Positions 1-21,367 of a stretch of DNA of 64,000 nucleotides are shown in pieces (within the stretch, counting starts at the first letter, position 1; each line of letters opens with the position of its first letter). The position numbers and the translations under genes are program-made. The notes under the pieces are model-generated. The model was not told the DNA's origin, made no database searches, and saw only the letters and a program-made list of their open reading frames with translations. The stretch spans positions 124,001 to 188,000 of the IMG/VR virus record IMGVR_UViG_3300034073_005389; one strand, given 5' to 3'.

Positions 1-61
1 TTAATTGTTCTGGTTCAACTACTGAGAGTATTTTACCATCGCCATGTTTAATAAAAGCCAT
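1..61 (-). CDS. hypothetical protein, 5' part only (runs off the window)
   Basis: Manual translation MAFIKHGDGKILSVVEPEQL..., with a GAGG RBS just upstream, directly after the stop of 73..726. Confidence 0.55.
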   Translation of the reverse strand, partial: MAFIKHGDGKILSVVEPEQL

Positions 62-72
62 ATAAACCTCGA

Positions 73-726: not shown

Positions 727-746
727 AATAATATTGTGTTTTATGC

Positions 747-1520: not shown

Positions 1521-2254
1521 AAATACCTAACTAAGTTGTTAAGTACTTCTCTAATATACCTAGGATTATGGTTGAAAAGTACAGTTTTAACGAAGGTGAT
1601 TGATTGCCCTAAAGAAGATGAGGCGGGCATTTTTTTAGAACCTAGCTCATTTTCATTTAAATAATAAAATTTTTGTTTTAGTCTATTAATAGATTTTTGT
1701 CTTTTTGCTGGAGAGATTCTATTTAGGATAAATTTAACAATATTAGCTAAATAGTTGCCAACTGTTTTTGGATCACCTAAACTAGGTAGGGAGGCGGCTA
1801 CTTTGACTAATTTATTTTTTATTTTAATTTTATATAATTTTTTAAACTTTTTTAAAGCATGATCTAAGGCAACATTAGGAACATTCTTCATTTTGCTTTT
1901 AACAGCTTGATCAAAATAAAATTTATATTCTTTTATAAACTCATTAGCAATATCGGGATCAATTTTGTTTAATTCTCTCATGATAGCAGATAAAGAAAAG
2001 AACTTAATTTTAGATAAGTCTAATTCTTTTTTAGGCTTTAAATCTAAGGTATCTAAGTATTTAAAATATTCAACTTGTTTTAATCTTTTTTCAGCTGCCT
2101 TTTTAGAAGAAAAAGTACCTAAATTCCTATTTCTTTGAGAAAGGACTCTATATTTACCACTAGGCAATTTTTTTATTTTTGCAGATTTGACTATGGTATT
2201 CTGACAATGTTGTTGATAGATGTCAGATATTTTAACAAATTGATCTATTGTCAT
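1517..2254 (-). CDS. hypothetical phage protein
   Basis: 245-aa ORF with 4-nt overlaps to both neighbours; basic beta-hairpin-like segment GKYRVLSQRNRNLGTFSSKKAAEKRL; IVKSA and LVKVAA motifs. Confidence 0.8.
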   Translation of the reverse strand: MTIDQFVKISDIYQQHCQNTIVKSAKIKKLPSGKYRVLSQRNRNLGTFSSKKAAEKRLKQVEYFKYLDTLDLKPKKELDLSKIKFFSLSAIMRELNKIDPDIANEFIKEYKFYFDQAVKSKMKNVPNVALDHALKKFKKLYKIKIKNKLVKVAASLPSLGDPKTVGNYLANIVKFILNRISPAKRQKSINRLKQKFYYLNENELGSKKMPASSSLGQSITFVKTVLFNHNPRYIREVLNNLVRYL

Positions 2255-2652
2255 CTCCCAAAATTCTTTACTATTTCAGAGGCTTCTCTACTTCTTAAAA
2301 ACATATCTTCTAGGTTAACGCCATCGCATACGCTTAATGTTCTAATGGCTCTTTCACTAATAAACATTAATTTTCCTGTTTTTAATTGCTTATTGTTATC
2401 AACATAAGCAGCACTAATTACAAGACATTCTCGATATGCTCCAACAACTTTACCGCAAAAAACAGCTGGATATTCTATTGAAATTTGCTCAATAGATACT
2501 TGTTCATAAGCATCACCAAGATAAATCTCTACAAATTTATCTTTAAATAGTTCTGCTAAAAACTCAGCAAAAGTTTTACAAGAATTTTCTAATTTTTTAG
2601 ATAATTCTTGCACTTCGAATTCATTAACATGTTCCATGTTTTCCTCAAGCAA
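2251..2652 (-). CDS. hypothetical protein
   Basis: 133-aa ORF overlapping both neighbours in the operon. Confidence 0.75.
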   Translation of the reverse strand: MLEENMEHVNEFEVQELSKKLENSCKTFAEFLAELFKDKFVEIYLGDAYEQVSIEQISIEYPAVFCGKVVGAYRECLVISAAYVDNNKQLKTGKLMFISERAIRTLSVCDGVNLEDMFLRSREASEIVKNFGR

Positions 2653-3700
2653 ATTTAAGTAAAAATTTTCTACGATTAGAGTTAATTGCAGCAGAAGTTA
2701 ATTCTGTAATAGATGACTTTTTATTCAGTAAAATTTTTGCATTTATTTGATATTCTGGAGAGTCTTCTATTTTATTATTAAAATAATTGATATTTTTTTG
2801 TATAATTTCTTGTGCGGCTTGAACTGCTAAATATTTTGGAGCTGGGAAAGAAAAATTAATTTCTACTTTATTATTGTTTGAGTGAATGCTACAATTAGAA
2901 GAGAGTTCTTGTTCTAAATTAAAAGCCAATCTATTAGCAAATTCTATATTATTAACTATATCAGGAGAGCTGATTTTAATTAAAGCATGATAAGTTGGAA
3001 TATCAGATGCTGCAGACTCAAATTGTTTTATTAATTGTTCTACTTCATTAATATTTGAAGGCTCTTCTGATAATTGTTCTAATTCAGCCATAAAATTTTC
3101 TAATTGTGGTTGAGATAAATTTTTTTCTTCAATTATTTTTTCTATTTTTTGTTGATATTTAGGTAGATTATATTTTTTATAAAAATTTGTTAATCTTTCA
3201 GAATAAACTTCTGGAGGTGCAAGATAGTATTTAGCAGTTCTTTTTGATTTAGGGTCGCTAGACTTTTCTAATCCAGTTAATAATCCTTTAGAAAAATGGT
3301 AAGGATCTGGTTTAGCAGATTTAACTGCTTCCCAGGCATCTGGATATTTTTTCTTAATTAATTGTACATAGTCTCTGACTCCTGATTTTAAATCAGGGTA
3401 AGCTTTATATTTATTTTTAATTTTTTGACCAGGAATACCTGAAGTTTCTTCTACTGTTTTTTCATCAAAAACATATGGGTCATTACCAGTGGCAACAATA
3501 TGACCTACGTTATAATTGCTAATTAATTGAGCGTCACCTATTTCAAAAGCACTATGTGATAATAATAAAGTTAATTGTTCTTGGGTAGGAGGGACTCCTT
3601 CTATTTCAGCAAATACATCTGCAATAGTTTTAGCTAACTCCTCTATAGGAACAGGGGTTTTTTGTCTAGGAACAGATGGTCCGGCGCCTAATTTAAACAT
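2645..3700 (-). CDS. putative GH73/FlgJ-like peptidoglycan hydrolase (N-terminal domain) with unknown C-terminal domain
   Basis: SHSAFE(IG)...NYNVGHI...KYKAYPDLKSGVRDYVQLIKKKY...YYLAPPEVY follows the GH73 layout (catalytic Glu helix, NxxG, F/Y-x-x-Y-x-x-x-x-x-S/G, YxT-like motif). Confidence 0.55.
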   Translation of the reverse strand: MFKLGAGPSVPRQKTPVPIEELAKTIADVFAEIEGVPPTQEQLTLLLSHSAFEIGDAQLISNYNVGHIVATGNDPYVFDEKTVEETSGIPGQKIKNKYKAYPDLKSGVRDYVQLIKKKYPDAWEAVKSAKPDPYHFSKGLLTGLEKSSDPKSKRTAKYYLAPPEVYSERLTNFYKKYNLPKYQQKIEKIIEEKNLSQPQLENFMAELEQLSEEPSNINEVEQLIKQFESAASDIPTYHALIKISSPDIVNNIEFANRLAFNLEQELSSNCSIHSNNNKVEINFSFPAPKYLAVQAAQEIIQKNINYFNNKIEDSPEYQINAKILLNKKSSITELTSAAINSNRRKFLLKFA

Positions 3701-3710
3701 AATTTCCTTA

Positions 3711-5900
3711 TTATCTAATTCTAGATGCTATTCTATATAGACTGGTCGATAAGTTTTTGTTTTTATTTTGAATTAATTTAGCGTATTTCTTCATAAATGA
3801 AGAAACTAAGATAGGTGACTCAGAGGATAAAGATTGTAAAGTGTGCATAAAATTACTAATAAAAGCATTTGCTTCAAGTTCGTTGATTGGTATTTTTGAT
3901 AAAACTGTTGCAGTAACAAAAATTGAATCCTTTGGCAGAGAGAAAATTTCTCCAGAAATTTTAAAAACTTTACTATTTTCATCTGACATATTTTCGACAA
4001 GCGTAGCTTTGATAGGATCAGATGTCCCCACAATTGCATCAAATATTCCTTTAATAGAATATTCTATATCGTTAAAACTTTCAATATCTTTAAAATAATC
4101 ATTTAATTTTATTTTATTATTAAGATCTTCAACGACAGCCTGAATTTCTTTACCTTGAACATTTGCTATAAGTAATATGCTGTCTAAATTATTACTATCA
4201 GCAAATATATCTTTTTTAATTAAACGCTGATCGGGTTCAAGGACATCGTCAGAGTTAGTAGCTGGGTTTTCTTTAGCGGGTTCTAATTGTTCTTCAGGAG
4301 AGGGAGTATTTTCTTTTTCTTTTTCTTCTTTTGGATATATTAAATCATTTTTAGTTACAGAAGCTAAATAATTATTATATTTTATAGTAATTTTTCCAGT
4401 CACTGGATTATCATTAACTATTTTAACTGAGATATTTTCTTCTAAATCTCTAGTATCATTGTCAAAATTATTTTGTTTATCGATTAAAGATTCAGCAGAT
4501 CTACTTTGTAAAAAAATATTTTTTTTAAAAATATTTTTTTTAATTAATATATTATTCTCAGATTTAGGAGAATCTGGAGGCGATACCTCTGGAGGAGGTG
4601 CTTCTGGAGTGGGTTCTACGGCAGGCTCTACGGCAGGCACTTGTGGTTCTGCAGCAGCCTCTTGAACTTGTTTAGCGCCTTCATTTATTTGCTTAGCTGG
4701 AGTTGCCCCATCAACTTGCAATTCACTTACATCAACGTCTATCTCTTCACCTTCACTTTCTAATACAGCAGTATTATCATCATTTATCCTAGAAATAACT
4801 GCTTCTCTTTCATCACTTGTTTTTACAGGTGTACCAGGGGTTAAATCGCGTTGAGGAGAAGTATTTTGGTCAGGCAATAAAGAAGGCTGTGCCGCAGGGG
4901 CGCCTTTAGGTGCTGGTGGAGGTGCTACTACACCCGCATCTGCAACATTTGCTGCTAAAGCAGCAGAATCTACTGTCGGTTCAGATTCAGATTGCTGTAT
5001 TGCCTCTGGAGGAGCAATATCTTCCAATATATTATTTAAATTACTTTTATGTTTTTGAAAATTAGCGCTATTAATTACGCCAGAATATCTATCAACTTGA
5101 TCAATTATTGTTTTAGAAGCTTTGACATAATCTGCAATTTTTCTTTCTGCTCTAGCTCTAGACATAATATTGAGCTGATTTTGCAATACATTTAACAATC
5201 TATCTGAAGCAGATAAAACAGATCTAATATCGTTTCTTAAATCTTTACTTATTCCTGGTTGAATTCTTTCCCATAAATCTAAAGCAGATTTTCTTTGCAT
5301 TTTAGAAAATAAAGAACGAACCCAATTAATTAATCCTGCTTTTTTATAAAAGCCAGCTTTTTTAAATAATTTTTTGTTTTTAGAATAAGCAGTAACGGCA
5401 GGAACATCTTGTGATGGAATATATTTTGGATCTTTTGATTTAGTTAAAAATCTTAATACAGATTCTGCTTGTTCTTCGGTTAATGGGTCTGCTAGAGAAG
5501 AAAAATACTCTGCATTCAAAGAAACTATGATATGTTCTGCATTTTTTAATAATTGTGCACAGTATAGTACTTTTACATAAAACTGTTCTAAGTAAGAGAT
5601 AGAAACTAGATATTCTTTATTTTCATAAGCATCTTTAGCATTATCCAATATATTTTTAATAGGACCTGATGCTTCTGATAAATATGGTATTTGATCTCCA
5701 ATTTTTCTATTTAATAGAGTAGCTCTAACTTGATTATCTACTTCACGCAATTGGTTCATCATTGTACCAAAGACATTGCTTTTGCCTTCTAAATATCTGC
5801 CGCCTAAGAAAGTAAACTCTCTGAATCTATCAGAACGAGATCGTTCTTGGGCTACTTTTAATAAATTTTGATTGCGTGAAATAGTTGAAGATCTAGACAT
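3711..5900 (-). CDS. array paralogue 4 (729 aa), putative internal head/ejection protein
   Basis: Shares the N-terminal module (RATLL...GDQIPY...KEYLVSISYLEQFY) and C-terminal ESPI-V-SF-KKYA module with three adjacent ORFs. Confidence 0.85.
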   Translation of the reverse strand: MSRSSTISRNQNLLKVAQERSRSDRFREFTFLGGRYLEGKSNVFGTMMNQLREVDNQVRATLLNRKIGDQIPYLSEASGPIKNILDNAKDAYENKEYLVSISYLEQFYVKVLYCAQLLKNAEHIIVSLNAEYFSSLADPLTEEQAESVLRFLTKSKDPKYIPSQDVPAVTAYSKNKKLFKKAGFYKKAGLINWVRSLFSKMQRKSALDLWERIQPGISKDLRNDIRSVLSASDRLLNVLQNQLNIMSRARAERKIADYVKASKTIIDQVDRYSGVINSANFQKHKSNLNNILEDIAPPEAIQQSESEPTVDSAALAANVADAGVVAPPPAPKGAPAAQPSLLPDQNTSPQRDLTPGTPVKTSDEREAVISRINDDNTAVLESEGEEIDVDVSELQVDGATPAKQINEGAKQVQEAAAEPQVPAVEPAVEPTPEAPPPEVSPPDSPKSENNILIKKNIFKKNIFLQSRSAESLIDKQNNFDNDTRDLEENISVKIVNDNPVTGKITIKYNNYLASVTKNDLIYPKEEKEKENTPSPEEQLEPAKENPATNSDDVLEPDQRLIKKDIFADSNNLDSILLIANVQGKEIQAVVEDLNNKIKLNDYFKDIESFNDIEYSIKGIFDAIVGTSDPIKATLVENMSDENSKVFKISGEIFSLPKDSIFVTATVLSKIPINELEANAFISNFMHTLQSLSSESPILVSSFMKKYAKLIQNKNKNLSTSLYRIASRIR

Positions 5901-5931
5901 GTATAATCCCTTTTATCATATAAGGTAATAA

Positions 5932-8499
5932 TCACATTATTCTTTTAGAAATTTTCATTAATTTTTGAGATAAATGTTTGTTGTTGGTAAGACGAGCATA
6001 TTTCTTCATAAATGAAGAAACTATAATAGGTGACTCATGAGATAATGCTTCTAAAGTGTAAATAAAATTGCTTTGTTTGTTTTGGTTGTCCTTATTTTGT
6101 TTATATAAAGCAATAGGAATTTTCTTTTCTGGATTAGTTAATATTTTATTTCCATTAGCTTTAAAAGTTATAACTCTACCTTTATCATCTTTTTCAATAT
6201 TTTCAAGATCATCAGGTAATGTGTAAGTTAAATAATATTTTCCTATGTCATAAGTTTTTAAATCTACTGCGGCAACTTTTACAGGTATTCTGTCTGGTAT
6301 TTTGGATTGATATTTATCAAATAATTGTTTAGAAATATTTTCCCCATATTCATTAAATCCAAAAATTTCTATTCTATGATTAACAACATCAGATTTATTA
6401 ATTTCTACATCGCTATCAATATTATAAATCGGTATTTCGCTTTCTAATTGAGATTCATCTATCTCTTTTTCTGGTTCTTTTCCTTTTGTTGAAATTTCTA
6501 CATCGCTACTTAAAGTAACTATCAAATATTCATTTTGCATTTGTACTTTAACATTAACTCCAGTAAGATCGCCCCCGCTAAAAATATCAATATTTTCTAA
6601 AATAATTTTTCTTTCTTTTAAAGCCCTTCTTAATTTGCCAACAACTATTCTTATAGGATATGAGCTAAAAGTTAAATTAATTATTAACTTAGCTCCTTTT
6701 TCAGGCAGCGTATCAGGTATTCCAGACTCTTTATCAAATCTATTTTTAATTGAATTTAATTGTTCTAGTGTTACGCCATTAATTTCAGCATTTATACTTT
6801 TAATATTGCAGGTAGTAAACATACCTGCATTTTTATTTAAGTCTAGTTTATTATATTTAATTTTTATTCTACCAATATTAGATCTAGCTCCAAGGACCTC
6901 TACCTGACTACCAAGATCTAATTCTACTTCCGTCATATTAGTTTCATCTACAGGAGCAGGTGCGTCGCCAGTAGGATTTCCTTCAGGAGATGCTGGTTCG
7001 GCTGGTGAGGCACCACCAGCTTCACCGTCAGATCCTCCACCAGCTTCTCCACCAACACCAGCTTCTTCACCAACACCAGCTTCTCCACCAGCAGCTTCTC
7101 CACCAGCAGCTTCTGGAGCAGCTGGTACGCTTGGTTGTCTAGGAGGAGGTAAATTTACTCCGCCATTTTCAACAATTACTTGAGCATCTGCAGCTTCTAA
7201 TGGTATTTGCGCTACAGGAACAACTTGCTCTTGACCATTTTCCTTATTTTCTACAGTAGCTTGATTATTATCTACACTTTTTACAGTAAACAAGCCTCTA
7301 ATTCCATTTATAACACCCCTAAAAAATTTGCCAATTAAACCTTTAGCATCATTAGGAATAGCTGCTGCTGGTGGTGGTGTAGCAGGATCAGCGGCAGCTT
7401 GAGCTTGTTGTTGTTGAAGTTGTTGCTGTTGAGGAGCATTAGCTGCAGGAGCACTAGTATTAGTTGGATTTTCTACTTGTGCCGCTAATTGAGGAGTAGG
7501 TTGAGCTACATTAGAATTATCTTTAGCTGCTTGTGCTTGCGCAGGAGTAGCCATTTGCTCTAATATTTTATTTAAACTGTCTGTATGCTTATTAAAATTT
7601 GCATTAGTAATAGTTCCGGAATAATTAGTAACTTTATTAACTAAGTCTTGAGAAAAACGATCATAATCTGCTATTTTTCTACCTGCCCTAGCCTCAGACA
7701 TTTTATTTAAATTAGTTTGAAAATTATTTAATAACCTATCAGAAGCAGATAATACTGTCCTGATATCGCGACTTAATTGCTTGCCAGCTCCAGGTTGAAT
7801 TCTTTCCCATAAATTCAAAGCAGATAATCTAGAATCAAATAACTCTTTTACCCAATCAATTAATCCAGCTGTTTTATGAAATTGAGCCTGCTTCCTCATA
7901 TTATAATTAATAGAAGATAGAGCAGCTAAATCTTTTGCATTCTGCTCTTTCATTCTCTTAATTTCTTCTCTGACTTCTGGAGAAAGATATTGTTCATTTT
8001 TTTGTTCTATTAAATAATTATAAATTCTTCTTTTTTGATCATCGGTTAAATCTTCTGCTAATGCTTTAAAATATTCTGCATTTAAATTTTTATTAATTTC
8101 ACTTACATTTTTTAATACTTGAGCACAATATAAAACTTTTTGATAAAATTGCTCTAAATAAGAAATAGAAACTAAATATTCTTTATTTTCATAATTTTTC
8201 TTGGCAGATTCCAATAAATCTTTTGCAGAAACTTCTCCAGCATATGGAATTTGATCTCCATATTTTTTACCAAGAAGAGTAGCTCTGACTAAATTGTCAG
8301 CCTGTCTTAATTGACCCATCATAACGCCAAAAATTTGTGTTTTATTTTCTAATCTTTTACCACCAAAATTTGACCATTCCAAAAACCTATCCGTCCAACC
8401 CCTATCTTGAGCAGTAACTATAATTTGGTTTGAGGTTTGGGCTGAGCTATAAACTTTTTGACTTGCTTTATAAACATTTAATGATGAAGTTCTAGACAT
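5932..8499 (-). CDS. array paralogue 3 (about 855 aa), putative internal head/ejection protein
   Basis: Same conserved termini. Start moved from track position 8547 to 8499 (MSRTSS, AAGGA RBS, matches MSRSS start of paralogue 4). Confidence 0.85.
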   Translation of the reverse strand: MSRTSSLNVYKASQKVYSSAQTSNQIIVTAQDRGWTDRFLEWSNFGGKRLENKTQIFGVMMGQLRQADNLVRATLLGKKYGDQIPYAGEVSAKDLLESAKKNYENKEYLVSISYLEQFYQKVLYCAQVLKNVSEINKNLNAEYFKALAEDLTDDQKRRIYNYLIEQKNEQYLSPEVREEIKRMKEQNAKDLAALSSINYNMRKQAQFHKTAGLIDWVKELFDSRLSALNLWERIQPGAGKQLSRDIRTVLSASDRLLNNFQTNLNKMSEARAGRKIADYDRFSQDLVNKVTNYSGTITNANFNKHTDSLNKILEQMATPAQAQAAKDNSNVAQPTPQLAAQVENPTNTSAPAANAPQQQQLQQQQAQAAADPATPPPAAAIPNDAKGLIGKFFRGVINGIRGLFTVKSVDNNQATVENKENGQEQVVPVAQIPLEAADAQVIVENGGVNLPPPRQPSVPAAPEAAGGEAAGGEAGVGEEAGVGGEAGGGSDGEAGGASPAEPASPEGNPTGDAPAPVDETNMTEVELDLGSQVEVLGARSNIGRIKIKYNKLDLNKNAGMFTTCNIKSINAEINGVTLEQLNSIKNRFDKESGIPDTLPEKGAKLIINLTFSSYPIRIVVGKLRRALKERKIILENIDIFSGGDLTGVNVKVQMQNEYLIVTLSSDVEISTKGKEPEKEIDESQLESEIPIYNIDSDVEINKSDVVNHRIEIFGFNEYGENISKQLFDKYQSKIPDRIPVKVAAVDLKTYDIGKYYLTYTLPDDLENIEKDDKGRVITFKANGNKILTNPEKKIPIALYKQNKDNQNKQSNFIYTLEALSHESPIIVSSFMKKYARLTNNKHLSQKLMKISKRIM

Positions 8500-8543
8500 A
8501 AATTTTTCCTTATAAAAATCTAAATATAATATCAGATTATTAA

Positions 8544-11500
8544 TCAAACCATCATAGAAGCTATCTTTTTTAATTTATATGATATTTTTTTATTTTTCTT
8601 ATTAATTAAATTAGCGTACTTCCTAATAAAAGAAGCTACTATAATTGGAGATTCATAAGATAATTTTTCTAAAATATAAACAAAAGAAGCTTTTTTAGCG
8701 TTTTTGAGATCTTGCTCAGGAATTAAGGCAGTTAAAGTAGTTGGAGTATCAGATGTAGGATCTGCTATATCTGCCTCAACTAAATAATAAACTATATTAT
8801 CTATATTTTGCTTTTCTTTAATAGTTACTGTGATTGGATCATTTATATTATTAAGTATTTCTGGCAAACTTTTATGTTGTGGTTTTAAATTGTTAATAAA
8901 AATATTTTTACTAATACTTATTTTATCATTTACAGAAAATTTTATTTCTGATGAGATACTATCTGCTATAACTCTATAGTTATCTATTATTTTTTGTTGA
9001 TAATCTTTATTATTTGAACGCATCATCAATTCTTTAACTATTGTCTGAATTTCCCAAAGATGAGCGGTTGGTTCTAAGTTAAAAAACTTATAAGCTTTCT
9101 GTAATGGTGTAAGATCTTCTTCAGGCTCTACAGATGGAGCTACGGCAATTGTAGACTGTACACTTTGAGATCCATCAGGAATAGATTCAGAACCACCTTG
9201 AGATGATTCAAATTCTTGATAAATTTCTGGCATCATACTTCTTATGACATTAGGAAAGGCTCGTTCAGTAAAATTTTCAAATAACCCATATAATGGGCCA
9301 TATGTTTTATCTTGATAAAAAATAATAAAATCATATTTATCATTAGATGATGATAAAGAATATAATTCTGCTTGCAAATAATCCGGATTATTTACAATAT
9401 TTTCTTTTACTTCTCTTTTTACTTGTTCTTTTATATTTTTAACATCTTTAACATCTTTTAATTCTAAAATATTTTGTAAAGATGGCGACATTCCGGTTGT
9501 CAAATTTTCAAAAAAATATTCAGTAGGTATTTTTACATTTATTTTATTTGTTTTTAATTTTTCTTTAATTATATTATATAGTTTTTGTGCGGGACTTTGT
9601 TGTACAACGCTCGGTACACCTGAACTCTCATCAGGAATCGATACACCAACCTCACCACTGCTTAAAGTTGCAAATTGATTTAATTTGTTAAAACTAATTT
9701 CTATTTTAGGAGAATCAAATTTAGGTCCTAATACTGATTTTAAATCATTAATAATAACAAATGCTTTTTTGTTTTGTTCATCAATTGATTCTATTTTAAT
9801 TGTAACAATGTTTTTATCACTTAATGTAAAATGACTCAACTTCTCTGTACTTAAATCGTCCTCTGTTACTTTTTTATATCCCTTTTTTTCTAGATATAAT
9901 TGTAGCACATAATTATTTATTGCCGAGAAACCTTCTTTAGTATTAAAATCAAATAATTCTGCAACAGAAATACTTAAAATATCTCCTACTTTAAACTTAG
10001 ACTCTAATCCCTCTGCTCCAGGAATATCTGATGGCTCTTGACTTGGAACAGGAGTTTTAAATTTATTAAATTTATTTCTTATAAATTTATCAAAAAATTT
10101 ATCATATAATTTTTCATATTCTTGTAAAGAGTATTTTTTGCTTTGTTCAGGATCTTTTGCAATAATATCTTTAACTCTATCAATAGCGGCAAGTAATTCT
10201 GCTATCGGAATAGCTAAATTTGGATTTTCTATGTCATCATATTTATTTAAATTATTTAAAATAAAATTATTTTTATCTTTAATATACTGATCAAGATCTG
10301 CAACTCCTGATACATCAGGAGTTATTCCCGCGAGATTTGCTAATTTGCCAAATCTAATTCTTGCCTCATCTATTTCAATATTTTCTGGTGGTAAAGATAA
10401 TTGTTTGCCATCAGGAGTAATGACGGAAATTTGATTACTTTCCCTATCAATTCCTTGTATCTTAACTTCCTGCTCTTTACCATCAATAGTAGCCTTGGCT
10501 CCAGTATTTGCAGGTATTCCAATAAAATCTCTAAGAGAAATAACCGCCCTAGCAAACCAACTTTTATTAGGAATCGGTGGAACTGCATCTTGTAATGCTT
10601 TAGATGCCTCTGCTACAACCTCTACTGTAACAGGAGATAATTCTCCTGCTTGTTGTTTTGATAATTCTTCAATATTATCTAATTTTTGTTGCGCATCTTG
10701 CGCAGCATTAATAAGACTAGCCGCTGCCGCTTGTACTTGCTCAACCTTAGCCTTACCCATATTCTTAATAGATTTAATTAACCTATTAAAAAATCCAGCA
10801 GCCTCTCTAGCTTTAGGCTGATCTTGTTCTTGATTTAATTGTTCTTCAACTCGTTGTAAATCAGGTAATACTGCCTGTAATTGTTCAGGGGTTTTTCTAT
10901 CTAAATTTTCTAAATTTGCTTTAACTTCTGGCTTAATAGATAAATTAAGATCATTTAAATCAATTTCTATACTAGGAATGTTGGCTTCAGCTTGACCTAC
11001 TTGTCTAACTTGCTCAATACTCTGCTGTAAATTACTTAAAGAAGCCGCAGCTTGTTGAGCAGCTTCTTTAATTTCTGGAGTTGCTGGATTAGCAGCAGCT
11101 AATTGTTGTTGAGCAGCTTGTATTTGTGGTTGGGCTGCAACTACTGCTTGTACTACAGCAACTGTGGCGGCTGGAGTGGCAGGAGCAGCTGCAACTTGAG
11201 CAGGAGAGGGCGCTGGAGCAGAAGTATTAGAGTTATTTTTAACTTGAGCGGACAATTGTGAGCTTGGTGCGCTGGTAGTATTACCAACTTCTTTTTGTTG
11301 TTCTGGAGGAACAACATTATTTAAAATATTTTGCAATTGATCTGCATACTGACTAAAATTAACTCTATCAATAGAAGAAGAGTATTGATTTACTTGATCA
11401 ACAATATTTTTAGATGTTTTAACGTAATCTGCTACTTGTCTATCTATTCTGGCTTGAGACATCTTATTAAGATTAGTTTGTAAAACATTTAATAATCTAT

Positions 11501-12269
11501 TAGATGCTGATAAAACTATTCTTAAATTTTTTTTTAAGTCTGTGCTTGCTTTAGGATAAATTTTTTCCCATAAATTTAAAGCAGATAATCTAGAACTAAA
11601 AAGTTGTTGTATCCAATCAGTTAAGCCAGCAGTTTTATAAAATTGTCCATGTTTTTGTATTTTATATTTGGTGTTACTGGTAACATTACCAAGATCTCTT
11701 TGTATGTTTTCTTTTAAATCTTTTAATTTTTTTCTTTCATCTTCAGAAAGATATTCTTCACCTTTAGCTTTAGCTAAATAATTTTTGATTCTCTCTTTCT
11801 GTTCATCGGTCAAATTCTCTGCTAAAGATTTAAAATATTCTTGATTTAAACTAATTGTTAATGAGTCTAAACTTTTTAATAATTGTGCACAGTATAATAC
11901 TTTTTGGTAAAATTGATCTAAATAAGAAATTGCTAACAAATACTCTTTGTTATTATAATTTTGTTGAGCTAAATCTAATACTTTTTTAATAGGTAAATCT
12001 CCAGCATATGGTGCTTGATCGCCCATTTTCTTTCCTAATAAAGTAGCTCTAATTCCGTTATCTACAGAACGCAAATTATTCATTATTAATTGAAATAAAT
12101 CGCTTTTTTTCTCTACTCTAGCTCCACCAAAATTAGCCCACTCTTTAAATGATTCGGTCCATCCCCAATCTTGAGCCAACTTGTTAAATTTATTTTGATT
12201 AGAAAATTGATATTTTTTTTGCATTTTGTCGTTTCCAAATAAAACTCTACTAAATACTGTTTTAACCAT
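8544..12269 (-). CDS. array paralogue 2 (1241 aa), putative internal head/ejection protein
   Basis: Same conserved termini; Ala/Gln/Pro linker; KOW/SH3-like segments; alternative start at 12224 (MQKKY). Confidence 0.85.
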   Translation of the reverse strand: MVKTVFSRVLFGNDKMQKKYQFSNQNKFNKLAQDWGWTESFKEWANFGGARVEKKSDLFQLIMNNLRSVDNGIRATLLGKKMGDQAPYAGDLPIKKVLDLAQQNYNNKEYLLAISYLDQFYQKVLYCAQLLKSLDSLTISLNQEYFKSLAENLTDEQKERIKNYLAKAKGEEYLSEDERKKLKDLKENIQRDLGNVTSNTKYKIQKHGQFYKTAGLTDWIQQLFSSRLSALNLWEKIYPKASTDLKKNLRIVLSASNRLLNVLQTNLNKMSQARIDRQVADYVKTSKNIVDQVNQYSSSIDRVNFSQYADQLQNILNNVVPPEQQKEVGNTTSAPSSQLSAQVKNNSNTSAPAPSPAQVAAAPATPAATVAVVQAVVAAQPQIQAAQQQLAAANPATPEIKEAAQQAAASLSNLQQSIEQVRQVGQAEANIPSIEIDLNDLNLSIKPEVKANLENLDRKTPEQLQAVLPDLQRVEEQLNQEQDQPKAREAAGFFNRLIKSIKNMGKAKVEQVQAAAASLINAAQDAQQKLDNIEELSKQQAGELSPVTVEVVAEASKALQDAVPPIPNKSWFARAVISLRDFIGIPANTGAKATIDGKEQEVKIQGIDRESNQISVITPDGKQLSLPPENIEIDEARIRFGKLANLAGITPDVSGVADLDQYIKDKNNFILNNLNKYDDIENPNLAIPIAELLAAIDRVKDIIAKDPEQSKKYSLQEYEKLYDKFFDKFIRNKFNKFKTPVPSQEPSDIPGAEGLESKFKVGDILSISVAELFDFNTKEGFSAINNYVLQLYLEKKGYKKVTEDDLSTEKLSHFTLSDKNIVTIKIESIDEQNKKAFVIINDLKSVLGPKFDSPKIEISFNKLNQFATLSSGEVGVSIPDESSGVPSVVQQSPAQKLYNIIKEKLKTNKINVKIPTEYFFENLTTGMSPSLQNILELKDVKDVKNIKEQVKREVKENIVNNPDYLQAELYSLSSSNDKYDFIIFYQDKTYGPLYGLFENFTERAFPNVIRSMMPEIYQEFESSQGGSESIPDGSQSVQSTIAVAPSVEPEEDLTPLQKAYKFFNLEPTAHLWEIQTIVKELMMRSNNKDYQQKIIDNYRVIADSISSEIKFSVNDKISISKNIFINNLKPQHKSLPEILNNINDPITVTIKEKQNIDNIVYYLVEADIADPTSDTPTTLTALIPEQDLKNAKKASFVYILEKLSYESPIIVASFIRKYANLINKKNKKISYKLKKIASMMV

Positions 12270-12271
12270 AG

Positions 12272-12301
12272 AAAACCAAAAACCCCTTTACAGAGGCTTT
12301 T
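12272..12301 (-). terminator. intrinsic terminator-like hairpin with GNRA loop
   Basis: Minus strand AAAAGCCTCT-GTAA-AGGGGTTTTT followed by GGTTTT, lying between paralogues 1 and 2. Confidence 0.55.
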
Positions 12302-12321
12302 GTTTTTATTTAAGTATTTTT

Positions 12322-15300
12322 TTATTTATTTAATAGTCTTAATCTTCTTAAAAAAGATTGAACAATTATAGGGGATTCTTTATTTTTAATTTGATTAAAT
12401 GCTTTCTTATAGTCTAACTCATCCTCATCTTCTTCTTCAAATTCTTCTTCCTCTTCCCCCAATCCTAATTCTTGTAAAAATTCTCTTTCTAAATCTTCAT
12501 CAGGACCTTCCCCTTCTCCTTCTCCTTGATCTTCTTCCCTTTCTTCTCCCGCAACCTCTTCTTTTTCTACCTCTTCTTCACTTACTTGTTTTCTTATATT
12601 TTTTTTATTTTCTTCAACTATATTTTTTAAAATATTATCTAAATATTCAGCTTTTTCGCTTTCTGATTTATTTTCTATGTCAGTTTGAATTTTTTCAAAT
12701 TTATTTGGAATCAACATGTTTAATAAATTTAATTTTTCATCAATAGTCATTTTTTTAGCAGGAGTTCTAGTTTCAACAATTGGGGAAGGCTTAATAGAAA
12801 CTGCAGGCTCATATCTATAGTCTTTATTACTTAAATAGTTTTCTAAAGTTGTTAAATTTCCTGATATTTGTTTAGTCACTAGACGGCTTTTGATAACTTC
12901 ATCCTCACCTTTTTCTTTATATTTTGCAGTCTCTTCTAATGATAACTCAAAATTTAAACTATTTTTATCTTTATTAAAAGTTAAAATTTTTATTTTTTTT
13001 GGTTGAGTTTGCATCGTTCCTAAAATTTTAAGCTTAGGAATATTTATTTTTTTTGTTTCAATTGGAGCATCTTCAAAAGAAAAAGTATCTCCTGCTTTAA
13101 TATTTTTTAATATTTCTTTTAATTGAGACTGGTTTGTAACCCCTTGCACTGATTCTACTGCTGGAGGAACTTTTTGTTCTGCAGGAGGAGAATCCTCCTC
13201 TGGAGAAAGAGGCGCTTCCTCATCTCTTTCTGTAAGTGTAGGCGGAGATGATGTAAATATTACTTTTTGTATTTTATTATTTTCTAAATCATTTGCATTA
13301 ACTGTAATAGTATGTGTACGATTACCATCAGTAAATGAAACTCTGGCAAATTGCTCATTTTCGTTTTCAATTAAAGTAGTATTTAAAATAAATCCAAAAT
13401 ATTCATCATTCTCAACAGGAGTATACTTAATAGCATCATCATTTTTAATTTCATTTAAATTACTATATTTTGTTAAAGTAAATTTGCTTGAATCAAAAAA
13501 TATAGCAAATCTATCAAGATTTTTTACTGCTTTTGCTGGTGACTGCCCACCTACTTCTGCTGGCGACTCCCCTGCTAGTGGTGGTTGCTCGCCTCCTGCT
13601 ACTGGTGGTTTTGCTGCTGGTTCAATCACTTTAACCAAATAATATTGTTTGGGATTAATTGTAAATATCGGGTCTATATTATCAAATCTTACTTCAATGC
13701 TTCCAGGATTATTATACTCTGCTCTATTTACATTAGTAACTGTTCCAGTTAAAATATTATTATTATTATTTTGCGCCTGTGCCAAAGAAACAAGCCTGTA
13801 TAATTCCATGTATGCTGTAGCAGTTTTAATAACTCCACTAGTATTATCAAATGTAATTCTATCTCCTACGTTATAATCTTTAGTATAAATATATTTTGGT
13901 AAAGCTGTTTTTTGATCGAGTAACTCTAAATGCTGTATAAAAATACTAAAGTTTCTACGACCAATTAAATATTTATGTTTATTTTCTAATGCACTATCAG
14001 AAACATTACAAACATATCTTAAAAATGGAAAATCTACTTGAACTTCTACTGCTGATATAATATTTGTAACTTTTCCTATTAATTGGGATGCAATTACATT
14101 ATCGTCAAAATCTTGTTGTCTAATAAAATTAAGAAAATCTTGAGAAATTCCAGCAACTTTACCCTGTACTATTGTGTCTGGCATAAAGCTAGAAATGTCT
14201 TTTTTAGTAGAGGCGGCTGATGGAGCAGGCTGTTTCTGAGGAGGAGTAGCAGTTTTAGGCGTAGCTCTAATTTTTGATGTTAAATCGTTCTCATAAATCA
14301 CTACCTCATAGCCAGGTCCGCTTGGATGGTTTTCAAAATTAAAATAATAACGATTGGAAATCGTATCGCCCTCTTGTGCTGTGTCTACTTTAACCAAAGT
14401 TCCATTACCCCAATCTGGTTCTTCAATATATTCAATACTGGCATTTTTAAGCCGCTTTTCAATCTTATTTTCAGTCGTACCACCAGGAGCACCAGCACCA
14501 GCACCAGCACCAGCACCAGCACCAGCACCAGCACCAGAAGCACCAGCACCAGAAGCACCAGCACCAGCAGGAGCAGCAGGAGTATTTGTTGAAAACAAAT
14601 TTTGTTGAATCAAATTGTCTTTAGAAGCAGATTCAGGGGATACTTCATCATAACCGTCAGCATTTTTATAATGTAAAAATACATTATTGTTATTGTTTTT
14701 ATCTTCAGAGAATTTAACGGTCTTGTTAATATTGATTTTGCTTGTATCTATGCCAAACATAGGACCTATAGTTCTTAACGCCAGTGGATTTATTACATGC
14801 TCTAAATTAATATTTAAATCTGTTACAGATTGCTTATACTCAATCGCATCTATTAAGTCTTTTAATTTATCTTTTGAAATTAATACGGGGGGGGTGGATC
14901 TTTCTTGAGTAGCTATATATCTATTGTTGTTTCGATCAAACACAATAGCAATAGGTCCTGGTTTTAAACCTTTTAAAATGCTTTTAACACCTCTACCAAC
15001 TGCTTTGGCAGAATACCCGTACATTACATTGTTTGATAATGCACTTGTAATTTCATCAATTTTTTTCTGAGCTTTTATCTGCTCATCTTCTGCAGTTATA
15101 TTTTTAATTATCTGTTTAGTAAAGATATTTGCCTTGGTGTTTCTAGGTAGTAAGAGTGCTTCCCAATCTCCTCTAGTTTTATCTGCTATCTCTTTTTTTA
15201 AAATATATCTATATGGTCTATTATCAGGACCAGTTATCTCAACAACATCTTCCTTTTTAAAAGTCTTTCGTAATTCTGCTGTTATTCTGCCACCTTTAAC

Positions 15301-16902
15301 AACAGTCTTTGTCTCTGGCTCTAGTTCCGCAGGTGCTGCTGCCGCTGCCGGTTCTGCTGCCGCTGGTGCTGCCGCTGCTCCTGCTGCTGCTTCCGGTTCT
15401 GCTGCTTCCAGTGGAGGTGAGGGCTTCGCAGCCGCCGCAGCTTGATTATTTGTATTTTTAACTTGAGTAATTGCATCATCACTTGCCGGAGCAACAACAT
15501 TTTTATTTGTATTTTGACTAGCTAATTTATTTGTAAAAAATGTTTTTAATTCTGCTAAACTTGTACTATATATTGGTCTGTTTGTATCAGATTCTGGCAA
15601 ATTACTAATTTTACTTGCTAAAGAATCTAATAAAGAAATAATGTTAGTAACTTCTTCTTGAGTATAATTACCTTCTTTATTAATTAAATCTTTAGCTTCA
15701 TTTAAACTCTGTTGAATATCAGTAATATTTTGTGGAGTAACAGGTGCTTGACTTAATTGCTGCCGGACTACAGTAGCACGAGCCAACTCACTATCACTAG
15801 CACGAGCTTGAGTTACTGGGACAGTTACATTTTTACCCTCTACCTCTACTACTACCTCACCAACATTTGGTCCAGGAGCAACCACCATTCCAGTAGCAGC
15901 TTGACCATTTACAGGTAAAACAACTGTATTCCCAGGACTAACGTCAACAGGCAATTGACTTTGTAAAGCTGTTGCAGTAGCAGAGTTAGTATTTACTTTA
16001 GGAGCAGCTGGTCTAGATGCATCATCTGCATTTTCAACCGCAGCACCTAAAGAAGCAGCACTAGGAGCCGTAGCTTGCTCTTTAGCTTCTTGCATTACCG
16101 TTTCAGGAATTTTAGTTCCTAGTACTTCTAAGATCTGACTCTTATATGTATTTAAATTTAAACTATTTAGTTTACCACTGTAAACTTGAATTGCATTTAC
16201 CGTGGCATCAGCAAGTAATACATAATTAGTTATGTGCCTTTCTGAACGATATCTAGACATCCTTACTAAATTATTTTTAATAGTATTTAAAATATTATTG
16301 GTAATAGAATATGCTTGTGTTAATACTGCGCGTAACTCTTTGGCAGCAGCTGGATTAATACTAGACCATAACTCTAACGCCGATTTGCGATCATTAAAAA
16401 ATCCACTATTGAAAATATGTGAAATAAAATCAAAAAATGCCGCAGTCTTTACAAAATTATGATCACTAGCTGTAGCTTTCTTGCTATTTAAATAATTACT
16501 AACTTGCTCCGCTTGCTCTGGTGTAATGTTTCCAGCCAAAAATTGTAAATATGCCTTGTTTAAAACAGTTAAATCTTGTTCAATTTTTTTAAATGTTTGA
16601 CATGTATATGCAATCTTAGAATATAATTGATCTAAATCTGATATTACTTGCAAATATTCTAAATTGTCTAAATTCTTTTTAGCACTTCTAAGTAACTCGT
16701 CTGCTGATACGTCGCCACCAAAAGGCATCGCCACGCCAACCGTCTTGCCAAGCAAAGTTGCTCGCACCTCATTATCGTGCTCTCGCAACCTGTCCATCAT
16801 ATCCCTAAAAATATCTACTTCGTTCTCAATCTTGCGAGCCCCAAAATTAGTCCATTCACGAAATAAGTCAGATAAAGATCTTTTTTGTGCAACTTTGTAC
16901 AT
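12322..16902 (-). CDS. array paralogue 1 (about 1526 aa), putative internal head/ejection protein
   Basis: Most divergent N-terminal module; shortened C-terminal ESPIIVQSF module; acidic tail. Start moved from 16914 (TTG) to 16902 (GAGG RBS, MYKVAQ). Confidence 0.85.
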   Translation of the reverse strand: MYKVAQKRSLSDLFREWTNFGARKIENEVDIFRDMMDRLREHDNEVRATLLGKTVGVAMPFGGDVSADELLRSAKKNLDNLEYLQVISDLDQLYSKIAYTCQTFKKIEQDLTVLNKAYLQFLAGNITPEQAEQVSNYLNSKKATASDHNFVKTAAFFDFISHIFNSGFFNDRKSALELWSSINPAAAKELRAVLTQAYSITNNILNTIKNNLVRMSRYRSERHITNYVLLADATVNAIQVYSGKLNSLNLNTYKSQILEVLGTKIPETVMQEAKEQATAPSAASLGAAVENADDASRPAAPKVNTNSATATALQSQLPVDVSPGNTVVLPVNGQAATGMVVAPGPNVGEVVVEVEGKNVTVPVTQARASDSELARATVVRQQLSQAPVTPQNITDIQQSLNEAKDLINKEGNYTQEEVTNIISLLDSLASKISNLPESDTNRPIYSTSLAELKTFFTNKLASQNTNKNVVAPASDDAITQVKNTNNQAAAAAKPSPPLEAAEPEAAAGAAAAPAAAEPAAAAAPAELEPETKTVVKGGRITAELRKTFKKEDVVEITGPDNRPYRYILKKEIADKTRGDWEALLLPRNTKANIFTKQIIKNITAEDEQIKAQKKIDEITSALSNNVMYGYSAKAVGRGVKSILKGLKPGPIAIVFDRNNNRYIATQERSTPPVLISKDKLKDLIDAIEYKQSVTDLNINLEHVINPLALRTIGPMFGIDTSKININKTVKFSEDKNNNNNVFLHYKNADGYDEVSPESASKDNLIQQNLFSTNTPAAPAGAGASGAGASGAGAGAGAGAGAGAGAPGGTTENKIEKRLKNASIEYIEEPDWGNGTLVKVDTAQEGDTISNRYYFNFENHPSGPGYEVVIYENDLTSKIRATPKTATPPQKQPAPSAASTKKDISSFMPDTIVQGKVAGISQDFLNFIRQQDFDDNVIASQLIGKVTNIISAVEVQVDFPFLRYVCNVSDSALENKHKYLIGRRNFSIFIQHLELLDQKTALPKYIYTKDYNVGDRITFDNTSGVIKTATAYMELYRLVSLAQAQNNNNNILTGTVTNVNRAEYNNPGSIEVRFDNIDPIFTINPKQYYLVKVIEPAAKPPVAGGEQPPLAGESPAEVGGQSPAKAVKNLDRFAIFFDSSKFTLTKYSNLNEIKNDDAIKYTPVENDEYFGFILNTTLIENENEQFARVSFTDGNRTHTITVNANDLENNKIQKVIFTSSPPTLTERDEEAPLSPEEDSPPAEQKVPPAVESVQGVTNQSQLKEILKNIKAGDTFSFEDAPIETKKINIPKLKILGTMQTQPKKIKILTFNKDKNSLNFELSLEETAKYKEKGEDEVIKSRLVTKQISGNLTTLENYLSNKDYRYEPAVSIKPSPIVETRTPAKKMTIDEKLNLLNMLIPNKFEKIQTDIENKSESEKAEYLDNILKNIVEENKKNIRKQVSEEEVEKEEVAGEEREEDQGEGEGEGPDEDLEREFLQELGLGEEEEEFEEEDEDELDYKKAFNQIKNKESPIIVQSFLRRLRLLNK
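14489..14566. repeat. coding tandem repeat (GCACCA)x8 plus two GAAGCACCAGCACCA units, encoding a Gly-Ala linker
   Basis: Read directly from the sequence; the 8 perfect copies span 14489-14536. Confidence 0.9.
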
Positions 16903-16962
16903 TTTTAACCTCAAAAATATAAACTATTTATATGTTAAACTAATAGTATCTTTTTTATTTTT

Positions 16963-19971: not shown

Positions 19972-20105
19972 GAGACCTCGATTAATAGACTTATACTTTA
20001 TATATACATGATAAATAATATATCAATTTTAAAATTATTAGTTGTTAAATATAATTTAATTATGTTGGTATTTCAATAATATAGTATTTTAAAATAGGAG
20101 ATAAA

Positions 20106-21365: not shown

Positions 21366-21367
21366 GA

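What the first reader, a model, noticed from the sequence alone, without database searches (positions are those of the whole stretch)
3711..16902. Tandem array of four giant paralogues with conserved ends and polymorphic middles: candidate modular capsid-cargo system
Seen: four consecutive genes (about 1526, 1241, 855 and 729 aa in transcription order) share a roughly 300-aa N-terminal module (F-x-E-W/F-x-x-F/L-G...M-x-x-LR-x-x-DN-x-x-RATLL...EYL...L-x-Q-F/L-Y-x-K...SAL-x-LW...Y-x-x-Q-L) and a 30-50-aa C-terminal module (L-x-x-LS-x-ESPI-x-V-x-SF-x-x-KYA-x-L, shortened in the longest copy). Between them lie an Ala/Pro/Gln linker and unrelated middle regions of very different length. Inference: the fixed termini act as capsid-targeting or assembly tags on swappable payloads, analogous to T4 internal proteins or phiKZ inner-head families but with a family I do not recognise. 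About 13 kb is devoted to it.
Basis: partly seen in the sequence, partly recalled or inferred. Interest (0 to 1): 0.8.

Follow-up and report, generated by a model that had tools for sequence, protein, structure and literature searches.

The report
Four-copy hypervariable phage head-gene array
A 371-kb uncultured freshwater/subsurface phage carries four giant tandem copies of a gene that its relatives keep as one small copy beside the portal gene, and their middle sections change fast between near-identical genomes, which suggests proteins packed in the head that meet the host, though this is untested.

Summary
Four co-directional minus-strand genes (1526, 1241, 855 and 729 aa) share a ~300-aa N-terminal module (33-53% identity, E 1e-50 to 1e-110). 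Three share a ~55-aa C-terminal module; the longest keeps only its first ~30 aa.

The termini are not portable tags. Together they define one uncharacterised family (306 clusters at 50% identity, no Pfam, PHROG or PDB match). Its usual form is a single ~430-aa basic protein: helical-bundle N-module, Pro-rich spacer, three-helix C-module. In 80 of 80 huge-phage loci it is single-copy and sits in the fixed order TerL, portal, X, peptidoglycan hydrolase, three small genes including a Tyr phosphatase, protease-scaffold fusion.

The four copies form one clade, so the array is a lineage-specific tandem amplification with the spacer expanded to 350-1200 acidic residues. Against a relative whose flanks are 96% identical in DNA, the middles show cassette replacement and dN/dS of 1.4-1.9 (flanks 0.14).

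Best reading (about 0.4): portal-proximal internal head proteins delivered with the DNA, with the middles under host-driven diversification. No recognisable payload domain exists and virion location is unproven. A scaffold role is less likely.

The parts
12322..16902 (-). Paralogue A (1526 aa). N-module at 16015-16902, variable middle at 12586-16014, acidic tract at 12388-12585, truncated C-module remnant (~21-30 aa, ESPIIV.SF core) at 12325-12387.
   Evidence: The most divergent copy: only 46% aa identity to its L001/L090 orthologues even in the N-module, although the adjacent portal is 100% identical.
8544..12269 (-). Paralogue B (1241 aa). N-module at 11220-12188, middle at 8733-11219, C-module at 8547-8732.
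   Evidence: N-module dN/dS against L001 is 0.20.
8931..10579 (-). Replaceable cassette inside B (about residues 564-1113). It cannot be aligned with L001 or L004, while both sides are 92-97% identical in DNA. A contig from another freshwater run also replaces about 8930-10631 with ~1140 nt.
5932..8499 (-). Paralogue C (855 aa). N-module at 7453-8424, middle at 6112-7452, C-module at 5935-6111.
   Evidence: It is colinear with its orthologues (78-92% aa). Middle dN/dS is 1.89 (bootstrap 95% CI 1.36-2.84).
3711..5900 (-). Paralogue D (729 aa). N-module at 4926-5864, middle at 3897-4925, C-module at 3714-3896.
   Evidence: AlphaFold2 with a 135-sequence alignment: N-module helical bundle mostly at pLDDT 80-98 (lower at its ends and in an internal 163-190 loop), residues 305-585 disordered, a low-confidence alpha/beta domain at 587-671, three C-terminal helices at pLDDT 86-95. 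Window 4335-4645 is replaced by ~830 nt in L001. Middle dN/dS is 1.36.
12277..12302 (-). Terminator-like hairpin (11 pairs plus a T-run) in the 52-nt gap between A and B.
   Evidence: This is a consensus scan only; function was not tested.
16963..19971 (-). Portal gene directly upstream of the array (1002 aa). It is interrupted by a 418-aa intein-like insert with a LAGLIDADG domain at about 17788-19041.
2645..3700 (-). Conserved gene directly downstream of the array (351 aa). It is the orthologue of the glucosaminidase/SLT-domain peptidoglycan hydrolase that follows the single-copy family member in all relatives.
   Evidence: 28% identity, E 1e-42, full length to L005's glucosaminidase-domain protein.
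73..2652 (-). The rest of the conserved block between the array and the protease-scaffold gene, which lies off the window: 133-aa, 245-aa, 257-aa Tyr/dual-specificity phosphatase (747-1520) and 217-aa genes.
21368..23227 (-). Large terminase (gpA-type ATPase), the start of the conserved head block.

Best explanation
The four genes are a lineage-specific tandem amplification of a single conserved head-module gene, here called family X. A large clade of uncultured huge phages, distantly related to Bacillus phage G, keeps this gene immediately downstream of the portal gene.

The ancestral protein has three parts: a basic, elongated helical-bundle N-module (~285 aa), a ~105-aa proline-rich spacer, and a 55-63-aa three-helix C-module at the extreme C-terminus. 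I infer that the two ordered ends are the parts that get the protein built into the prohead, by docking to the portal vertex, the capsid interior, packaged DNA or a neighbouring gene product. This would make X a portal-proximal internal head protein that leaves the capsid with the DNA, functionally like SPP1 gp7/MuF, the T4 internal proteins or the phiKZ-type ejection proteins.

In this lineage the gene was duplicated three times, in the order (A,(B,(C,D))). The spacer grew to 350-1200 acidic, largely disordered residues with small folded inserts. That middle now evolves by repeat slippage, cassette replacement and positive selection, as expected for a surface that meets host factors after delivery.

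Shown: paralogy, family architecture, synteny, single origin of the copies, cassette polymorphism and elevated dN/dS. Inferred: presence in the virion, anchoring by the termini, delivery into the host, and an arms race as the cause of diversification.
For: (1) Position. In 80 of 80 IMG/VR loci, and in L005 and L006, the order is TerL, portal, X, peptidoglycan hydrolase, g135, g246, Tyr phosphatase, g216, protease-fusion. Genes right after the portal classically encode minor head proteins that are packaged and injected and are often fused to effector domains (MuF/SPP1 gp7; PMC5512222). Lysozyme-type domains, as carried by one neighbour in the block, are among the domains that paper describes in head-packaged polyvalent proteins; the phosphatase neighbour also hits Pfam's PTP-SAK and Tc-R-P models.

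(2) A separate scaffold exists. The ~1184-aa downstream protein has a prohead protease domain (33% identity to phage G gp19; phrog_18299) followed by ~900 acidic Ala/Pro-rich residues with their own conserved C-terminal tail. That tail is unrelated to X's C-module.

(3) Charge. Typical X proteins are basic (median pI 9.1, N-module net +8), unlike acidic phage scaffolds. The window copies have basic ends (+6 to +15 in B-D) and acidic middles (-12 in A, -17 to -29 in B-D).

(4) Structure. Both termini fold with high confidence and the spacer does not. 146 of 162 family proteins carry the C-module at the very C-terminus.

(5) Origin. The four classes form one clade (support 100/100) and each class is monophyletic across genomes.

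(6) Hypervariability. Against L001 the flanks are 96% identical in DNA and 97-100% in protein, while A is only 46% identical and the middles of A, B and D are replaced. dN/dS is 0.14 in the flanks, 1.89 in C's middle and 1.36 in D's middle. Across the clade, X and the hydrolase evolve 3-4 times faster than the portal.

(7) Maintained coding. ORFs of 2.2-4.6 kb stay intact in a 30% G+C genome in every relative.

(8) Precedent. Paralogue families of internal/ejection head proteins with plastic copy number exist in giant phages (PMC5694885).
Against: There is no virion proteomics and no cultured relative: tblastn against 50,697 phage records finds nothing.

There is no sequence or fold similarity to MuF, phiKZ internal proteins, T4 internal proteins or any solved structure. 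The functional analogy therefore rests on gene position, charge and evolutionary behaviour.

The middles hold no recognisable effector domain.

dN/dS was computed with Nei-Gojobori on pairwise alignments of an AT-rich, mosaic, partly low-complexity region, so recombination or misalignment could inflate it.

A conserved extreme C-terminal helical module is also the hallmark of scaffolding proteins.
Confidence: 0.4

Rival explanations
1. Scaffolding or core proteins. X is the clade's P22/80-alpha-type scaffold: the N-module oligomerises or recruits the portal, and the C-terminal helical module binds the inner face of the coat protein. The four giant copies would fill or organise the very large procapsid and be expelled or degraded at DNA packaging.
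For: The protein is helical and extended, with a small and strongly conserved helical module at the extreme C-terminus. The gene lies between the portal and the protease/capsid genes. The middles of the window copies are acidic. Scaffolds generally evolve fast.
Against: Typical family members are basic (median pI 9.1). The clade already encodes a ~900-aa acidic extension fused to the prohead protease, with its own conserved C-terminal tail, which is the classical protease-scaffold arrangement. Copy lengths differ greatly between phages whose other head genes are 97-100% identical (729, 900 and 1126 aa for D; 1526, 1916 and ~1970 aa for A), which argues against a size-determining role. dN/dS above 1 is not expected of a scaffold. 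There is no sequence or fold match to known scaffolds.
Confidence: 0.2
2. Externally displayed neck or head fibres, or decoration proteins. Both conserved ends would anchor to the portal/neck or capsid exterior, and the variable middle would be looped out as an adhesin-like surface that diversifies with host or environmental ligands.
For: The Ala/Pro-rich linkers plus small folded inserts, the cassette exchange and the positive selection all resemble surface-exposed phage proteins. The gene lies next to the portal gene.
Against: No Ig-like, fibre, collar or decoration family matches. Fibres usually vary at the C-terminal tip, whereas here the C-terminus is the most conserved part. The single-copy ancestral form has only a Pro-rich spacer to display. 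The neighbouring genes (hydrolase, phosphatase) fit internal or delivered proteins better.
Confidence: 0.12
3. Functionally conserved ends with a largely unconstrained spacer. Duplication and spacer growth would be neutral by-products of slippage and recombination in low-complexity sequence, and the middles would have no specific role. The protein itself could be a non-virion assembly or packaging factor.
For: Tandem-repeat tracts lie in the linkers. 43-58% of each protein is low-hydrophobicity sequence. No domains are found. Several dN/dS intervals include 1.
Against: C's middle has dN/dS of 1.89 with a bootstrap interval that excludes 1. Four very long ORFs are kept intact in all relatives despite 30% G+C. 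Each paralogue class is conserved as a class across genomes. The middles include hydrophobic, probably folded segments that are conserved at 40-50% between orthologues.
Confidence: 0.15

Closest known systems
SPP1 gp7 / Mu gpF (MuF domain, PF04233) minor head proteins and MuF-fused polymorphic effectors
   Same: The gene lies immediately downstream of the portal gene in a terminase-portal head module. A conserved assembly part is joined to a variable part. The MuF proteins are known to be head-packaged and proposed to be delivered with the DNA (PMC5512222).
   Different: No PF04233 match at E up to 0.1. The N-module is predicted to be an all-alpha elongated bundle. The variable part is internal, between two conserved ends, rather than C-terminal, and it carries no recognisable toxin or enzyme domain.
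phiKZ/SPN3US inner-body and ejection-protein paralogue families (e.g. PF12699)
   Same: Giant-phage head proteins occur as paralogue families whose copy number varies between related phages (PMC5694885).
   Different: No PF12699 match. The phage clade is different: its portal and protease are related to phage G, not phiKZ. The phiKZ-type proteins use N-terminal propeptides cleaved by the prohead protease, whereas here both ends are conserved and no cleavage motif was identified.
T4 internal proteins IPI-III and Alt with the N-terminal capsid-targeting sequence
   Same: These are basic, head-internal, injected proteins.
   Different: From general knowledge, the T4 tag is about 10 residues and is cleaved off, and it is carried by unrelated cargo proteins. 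Here the 'tags' are a 300-aa domain plus a 55-aa domain that are never found on any other protein.
P22 gp8 / 80-alpha-type scaffolding proteins with a C-terminal coat-binding helix-turn-helix
   Same: An extended helical protein with a small, conserved, basic helical module at the extreme C-terminus, encoded between the portal and capsid genes.
   Different: The overall charge is basic. A separate protease-scaffold fusion is present. There is no sequence or fold match.
Bacillus phage G gp15 (458 aa, directly downstream of portal gp14)
   Same: It occupies the same position next to the closest cultured portal homologue (32% identity) and is similar in size to typical X proteins.
   Different: It is not detectably homologous (hhalign probability 0.1%), and it is acidic (pI 4.85).

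Membership tests
Family X (uncharacterised portal-adjacent protein of G-like huge phages, defined here) | N-terminal ~285-aa module matching the family profile | tested here: met
   All four paralogues match at E 3e-140 to 9e-164. The profile finds 306 representative clusters.
Family X (uncharacterised portal-adjacent protein of G-like huge phages, defined here) | 55-63-aa three-helix module at the extreme C-terminus | tested here: met
   B, C and D match at E 1e-13 to 4e-16. A keeps only the first ~30 aa and falls below the HMM threshold.
Family X (uncharacterised portal-adjacent protein of G-like huge phages, defined here) | Position directly downstream of the portal and upstream of the hydrolase, phosphatase and protease-fusion block | tested here: met
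   Window order compared with 80 of 80 IMG/VR loci.
MuF / SPP1 gp7 (PF04233) | Match to the Phage_Mu_F domain | tested here: not met
   No Pfam hit at E up to 0.1 in A-D. The precomputed Pfam fields are empty for single-copy members.
MuF / SPP1 gp7 (PF04233) | Minor head protein bound to the portal and present in virions | not testable with these tools
   This needs virion proteomics or interaction assays.
phiKZ-type internal head protein family (PF12699) | Match to PF12699 | tested here: not met
   No hit.
phiKZ-type internal head protein family (PF12699) | N-terminal propeptide removed by the prohead protease at a conserved motif | tested here: inconclusive
   I saw no conserved cleavage-type motif at the module boundaries in the family consensus. 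The protease's specificity is unknown.
T4-type CTS-tagged internal proteins | A short shared targeting peptide on otherwise unrelated proteins | tested here: not met
   The N- and C-modules occur on no other ORF in six-frame translations of the window, L001, L002, L005 or L006.
P22/80-alpha-type scaffolding proteins | Sequence or fold similarity to solved scaffolds | tested here: not met
   Profile search against PDB sequences: best E 0.1, unrelated proteins. Foldseek against PDB: no hit at E up to 1e-3.
P22/80-alpha-type scaffolding proteins | The C-terminal module binds the coat protein; the protein is present in proheads and absent from mature heads | not testable with these tools
   The major capsid protein of this clade was not even identified.
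Tail fibre / baseplate families | Match to any tail-fibre, receptor-binding or baseplate profile | tested here: not met
   No such Pfam or PHROG hits in A-D or in typical members.

The most novel reading that the evidence does not exclude
A two-anchor 'display' architecture. A conserved head protein is held by both ends, and its spacer has been converted into a multi-allelic, positively selected cassette region, amplified to four loci. This would be a phage-internal counterpart of polymorphic-toxin or antigenic-variation loci: the delivered middles would act as decoys or inhibitors of host sensors that recognise incoming phage proteins or DNA, for example acidic DNA-mimic-like tracts. It would be a previously undescribed way for huge phages to diversify what they inject without changing the assembly interface.
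Probability: 0.15. Interest if true: 0.8.

Novelty: new variant of a known kind. Interest (0 to 1): 0.55.

Why it matters
Family X is a core, fast-evolving and completely unannotated gene of the head module in a large clade of uncultured huge phages. That clade includes 306 clusters at 50% identity on contigs up to 480 kb.

Showing what X does would annotate a fixed position in hundreds of genomes. The four-copy array gives a natural experiment: the assembly ends are identical, the middles diverge, and the rest of the genome is near-identical. If the proteins are delivered into the host, the array would be a new example of how giant phages diversify injected proteins. The conserved ends would also be candidate handles for packaging foreign proteins into large capsids.

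Tried and rejected
- Megablast and tblastn of the array, of C's N-module and of a typical member against 50,697 phage records found nothing.
- Pfam and PHROGs scans of A-D, of ten typical members and of seven long members gave only sub-threshold noise.
- ESM Atlas searches with a typical member and with A residues 900-1260 gave scores of 0.72 or less. Weak leads to small SH3-like proteins or DUF3104 were not pursued as evidence.
- A profile search of PDB sequences and Foldseek against PDB returned only generic helical bundles, including soluble ClyA/AhlC-type toxins at E above 0.1. I reject these as chance hits to long helices.
- Foldseek against BFVD gave one real hit, an uncharacterised family member.
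- AlphaFold2 with only the four paralogues was unusable (pLDDT 51).
- hhalign of the family against phage G gp15, and against the scaffold extension and its C-terminal tail, found no relation.
- A word-index search with a cut-out piece of B's middle (residues 828-1170) found nothing. The search on A's middle (residues 560-1400) was uninformative: it did not recover even the query's own entry, probably because low-complexity words dominated the candidates.
- IMG/VR and metagenome scans with the window-type N-module recovered only the same phage and L004.
- A mirror-tree test for co-variation was exploratory and too weak to use. The N-module co-varies most with g246 (partial r 0.52) and the C-module with g216 (0.41).
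- Laying Logan contigs of four runs on the array was mostly noise from short AT-rich contigs. Only one 2.9-kb contig was informative.
- The major capsid protein of the clade could not be identified.

Full report
**What is there**

The window comes from a ~371-kb contig of an uncultured phage. Its G+C content is about 30%, and its exact sequence occurs in subsurface and freshwater metagenomes. On the minus strand the gene order is:
- large terminase, 21368-23227
- an HNH endonuclease gene
- portal, 16963-19971
- four long ORFs: A (12322-16902, 1526 aa), B (8544-12269, 1241 aa), C (5932-8499, 855 aa) and D (3711-5900, 729 aa)
- genes of 351, 133, 245, 257 and 217 aa

Elsewhere the window encodes DnaE, a trigger-factor homologue and SbcCD. 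These fit a very large lytic phage.

**Check of the observation**

The N-terminal ~300 aa of the four proteins are clearly homologous. A is 33-36% identical to B, C and D (E about 1e-50). B, C and D are 48-53% identical to each other (E 1e-86 to 1e-110). There are 70 invariant columns.

B, C and D end in a shared ~55-aa module. A keeps only its first ~30 residues, the ESPIIV.SF core, after a strongly acidic tract.

Between the two ends lie Ala/Pro/Gln/Glu/Gly-rich tracts with short DNA tandem repeats, mixed with more hydrophobic stretches. With low-complexity filtering the middles of different paralogues show no significant BLASTP similarity. The exception is a ~150-aa stretch shared by B and D just before the C-module.

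An IMG/VR contig of 361 kb is 100% identical over window positions 1-18424, so the array is not an assembly artefact.

**The family behind the two modules**

A profile of the N-module, searched against 1.84 billion representative proteins, found 306 clusters at E of 1e-3 or better. Most are 400-550 aa and start with the module at residue 1.

Of the 162 sequences I held, 146 also carry the C-module at the very C-terminus. The exceptions are fragments and the A-type proteins.

The typical protein has three parts:
- a ~285-aa N-module with net charge +8
- a ~105-aa spacer with 18% proline
- a ~63-aa C-module

Its median pI is 9.1.

AlphaFold2 on D, using a 135-sequence family alignment, gave the following:
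- a confident elongated helical bundle for the N-module (mostly pLDDT 80-98, lower at its ends and in an internal loop at 163-190)
- disorder from residues 305 to 585
- a low-confidence alpha/beta domain at 587-671
- three confident helices for the C-module (pLDDT 86-95)

Nothing known matches. I found no Pfam or PHROG family, no PDB sequence and no PDB fold beyond generic helical bundles. In BFVD the only real hit is an uncharacterised family member. No cultured phage encodes the family.

**Genomic context across the clade**

In 80 of 80 IMG/VR loci, and in two further contigs, the order is fixed:
- TerL
- portal
- X, in a single copy of 400-570 aa
- a peptidoglycan hydrolase (glucosaminidase or SLT type)
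- a ~135-aa gene
- a ~246-aa gene
- a Tyr/dual-specificity phosphatase
- a ~216-aa gene
- a ~1150-1250-aa protein

The contigs reach 480 kb. The window's 351-aa gene is the full-length orthologue of the hydrolase.

The last protein in the block starts with a prohead protease. It is 33% identical to phage G gp19 and matches phrog_18299. It continues with ~900 acidic, Ala/Pro-rich residues that end in their own conserved tail. I read this as a protease-scaffold fusion.

The closest cultured portal is phage G gp14, at 32% identity. G's positional counterpart, gp15, is not detectably related to X.

**Origin of the array**

In a maximum-likelihood tree of N-modules, the four classes form one clade (support 100/100) on a long stem, separate from 36 single-copy members. 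Each class is monophyletic across genomes, with topology (A,(B,(C,D))).

The array therefore arose by serial tandem duplication within this lineage, before its known members diverged. Another lineage shows a fused N-C-N-C double protein (P0015). This shows that tandem duplication of the gene recurs.

**Behaviour among close relatives**

L001 is a 47-kb ENA contig. Its flanking genes are 97-100% identical to the window in protein and 96% in DNA. Within the array the picture is very different:
- A is only 46% identical even in its N-module, and its middle cannot be aligned.
- B is 97% identical in DNA up to position 10579. It is then replaced down to 8931, and alignment resumes from there at 92% overall.
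- D has window 4335-4645 replaced by ~830 nt.

L004 breaks at the same left boundary in B. A 2.9-kb contig from another freshwater run replaces the same segment with ~1140 nt.

Orthologue lengths differ widely:
- A: 1526, 1916 and ~1970 aa
- B: 1241, 1054 and 1244 aa
- D: 729, 900 and 1126 aa

Nei-Gojobori dN/dS values against L001 are as follows:

| Region | dN/dS | Bootstrap 95% CI |
|---|---|---|
| Four flanking genes | 0.14 | 0.06-0.26 |
| B N-module | 0.20 | 0.04-0.72 |
| C middle | 1.89 | 1.36-2.84 |
| C whole protein | 1.66 | 1.23-2.33 |
| D middle | 1.36 | 1.00-2.01 |

Caveats apply to these figures. The estimator is simple, the genome is AT-rich, and mosaic recombination or misalignment in low-complexity tracts could inflate the values.

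Across the clade, X and the hydrolase are the fastest-evolving proteins of the block. Their median distance is about 1.0, against 0.25 for the portal.

**Interpretation**

- The termini are not a portable tag. They are found on no other ORF, always occur together, and in the usual state they flank only a spacer.
- The expanded middles contain no recognisable domain, either here or in seven long relatives. A search with a cut-out piece of B's middle found no free-standing homologue, and the search on A's middle was uninformative.
- What is right is that the ends are the constrained, structured parts and the middle is free to vary.

I favour an internal, portal-proximal head protein that is delivered with the DNA, for three reasons.
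- First, the gene position: right after the portal, next to a hydrolase and a phosphatase; lysozyme-type domains are among those described in head-packaged effectors (PMC5512222), and the phosphatase hits Pfam's PTP-SAK and Tc-R-P models.
- Second, the basic charge of the conserved parts.
- Third, the existence of a separate acidic protease-scaffold.

Cassette exchange and dN/dS above 1 fit proteins that meet host factors. Giant phages of the phiKZ group provide a precedent for paralogue families of ejection proteins with plastic copy number (PMC5694885).

This remains an inference, and I put it at about 0.4. The alternatives are:
- a scaffold role, about 0.2. It is weakened by the basic charge, the separate scaffold, the length differences between otherwise identical head modules, and the positive selection.
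- external display on the neck or head, about 0.12
- neutral spacer inflation in a protein of some other assembly function, about 0.15

**Novelty**

The family is unannotated and has no cultured member. As a kind of thing, namely paralogous and variable head-module proteins in a giant phage, it has precedents. The architecture is different, however: two conserved anchoring ends with an expanded, positively selected middle, derived from a single-copy core gene. I rate it a new variant of a known kind, with moderate interest. Function is the open point, and virion proteomics would settle most of it.

Noticed in passing
window 16963-19971 (insert at about 17788-19041): The portal gene carries a 418-aa intein-like insert. 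It starts with Cys, ends ...GN followed by Ser, and holds a LAGLIDADG_3 domain. It lies at the position matching residue 314/315 of an intein-free relative. In related loci the portal (976-1796 aa), TerL (971-1337 aa) and protease-scaffold (1582-1600 aa) genes also come in enlarged forms, so inteins appear common in this clade's head genes.
   Followed up: partly
L005:15129-18683 and its orthologues (off the left end of the window; L001:19729 onward): A ~1184-aa protein has a prohead protease domain (33% identity to phage G gp19) followed by ~900 acidic Ala/Pro-rich residues. It contains a duplicated YFQG.GGVNEPTPG..KYP motif and a conserved C-terminal tail (...LSAAFAKTSKRLF). This is a likely protease-scaffold fusion. 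The clade's major capsid protein was not identified.
   Followed up: partly
window 747-1520 and 2645-3700: A Tyr/dual-specificity phosphatase (Y_phosphatase2/3, with weak PTP-SAK and Tc-R-P hits) and a peptidoglycan-hydrolase orthologue are fixed members of the block between the portal and the protease-scaffold gene in every relative. They are candidates for virion-delivered enzymes.
   Followed up: partly
window 20106-21365: An HNH endonuclease gene (20622-21365, minus strand) and a lone plus-strand 174-aa ORF (20106-20630) sit between the terminase and portal genes. The typical relatives examined in detail (L005 and most IMG/VR loci) lack them; close relatives such as L090 have equivalent genes. 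GC skew flips to +0.28 in 20001-22000. This is probably an inserted mobile element.
   Followed up: no
window 12277-12302, minus strand: The only convincing minus-strand terminator-like hairpin in the array lies in the gap between A and B. It could uncouple the expression level of A from that of B-D.
   Followed up: no
P0015 (778 aa; ENA contig of 16 kb): This family member has the architecture N-module, C-module, N-module, C-module in a single polypeptide. It is an independent tandem duplication fixed as a fusion.
   Followed up: partly
window 39565-43185, 45937-49431, 50910-52154, 54985-58379, 25588-26355: The window also encodes a 1206-aa protein with a PilY1-type beta-propeller, a full DnaE (Pol III alpha), a trigger-factor homologue, an SbcC/SbcD pair and a CCA-adding/poly(A) polymerase-family enzyme. 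A phage-encoded trigger factor is unusual.
   Followed up: no
L001 about 3500-3860: The A orthologue in this relative is interrupted by a run of N (a scaffold gap) inside low-complexity sequence. The two ORFs that the gene caller reports there are therefore one gene of ~1970 aa.
   Followed up: yes
38 IMG/VR loci (L008-L087): In an exploratory mirror-tree analysis, the N-module co-varies most with the ~246-aa gene (window 1517-2254; partial r 0.52). The C-module co-varies most with the ~216-aa gene (window 73-726; partial r 0.41). These are possible interaction partners, but the evidence is weak.
   Followed up: partly
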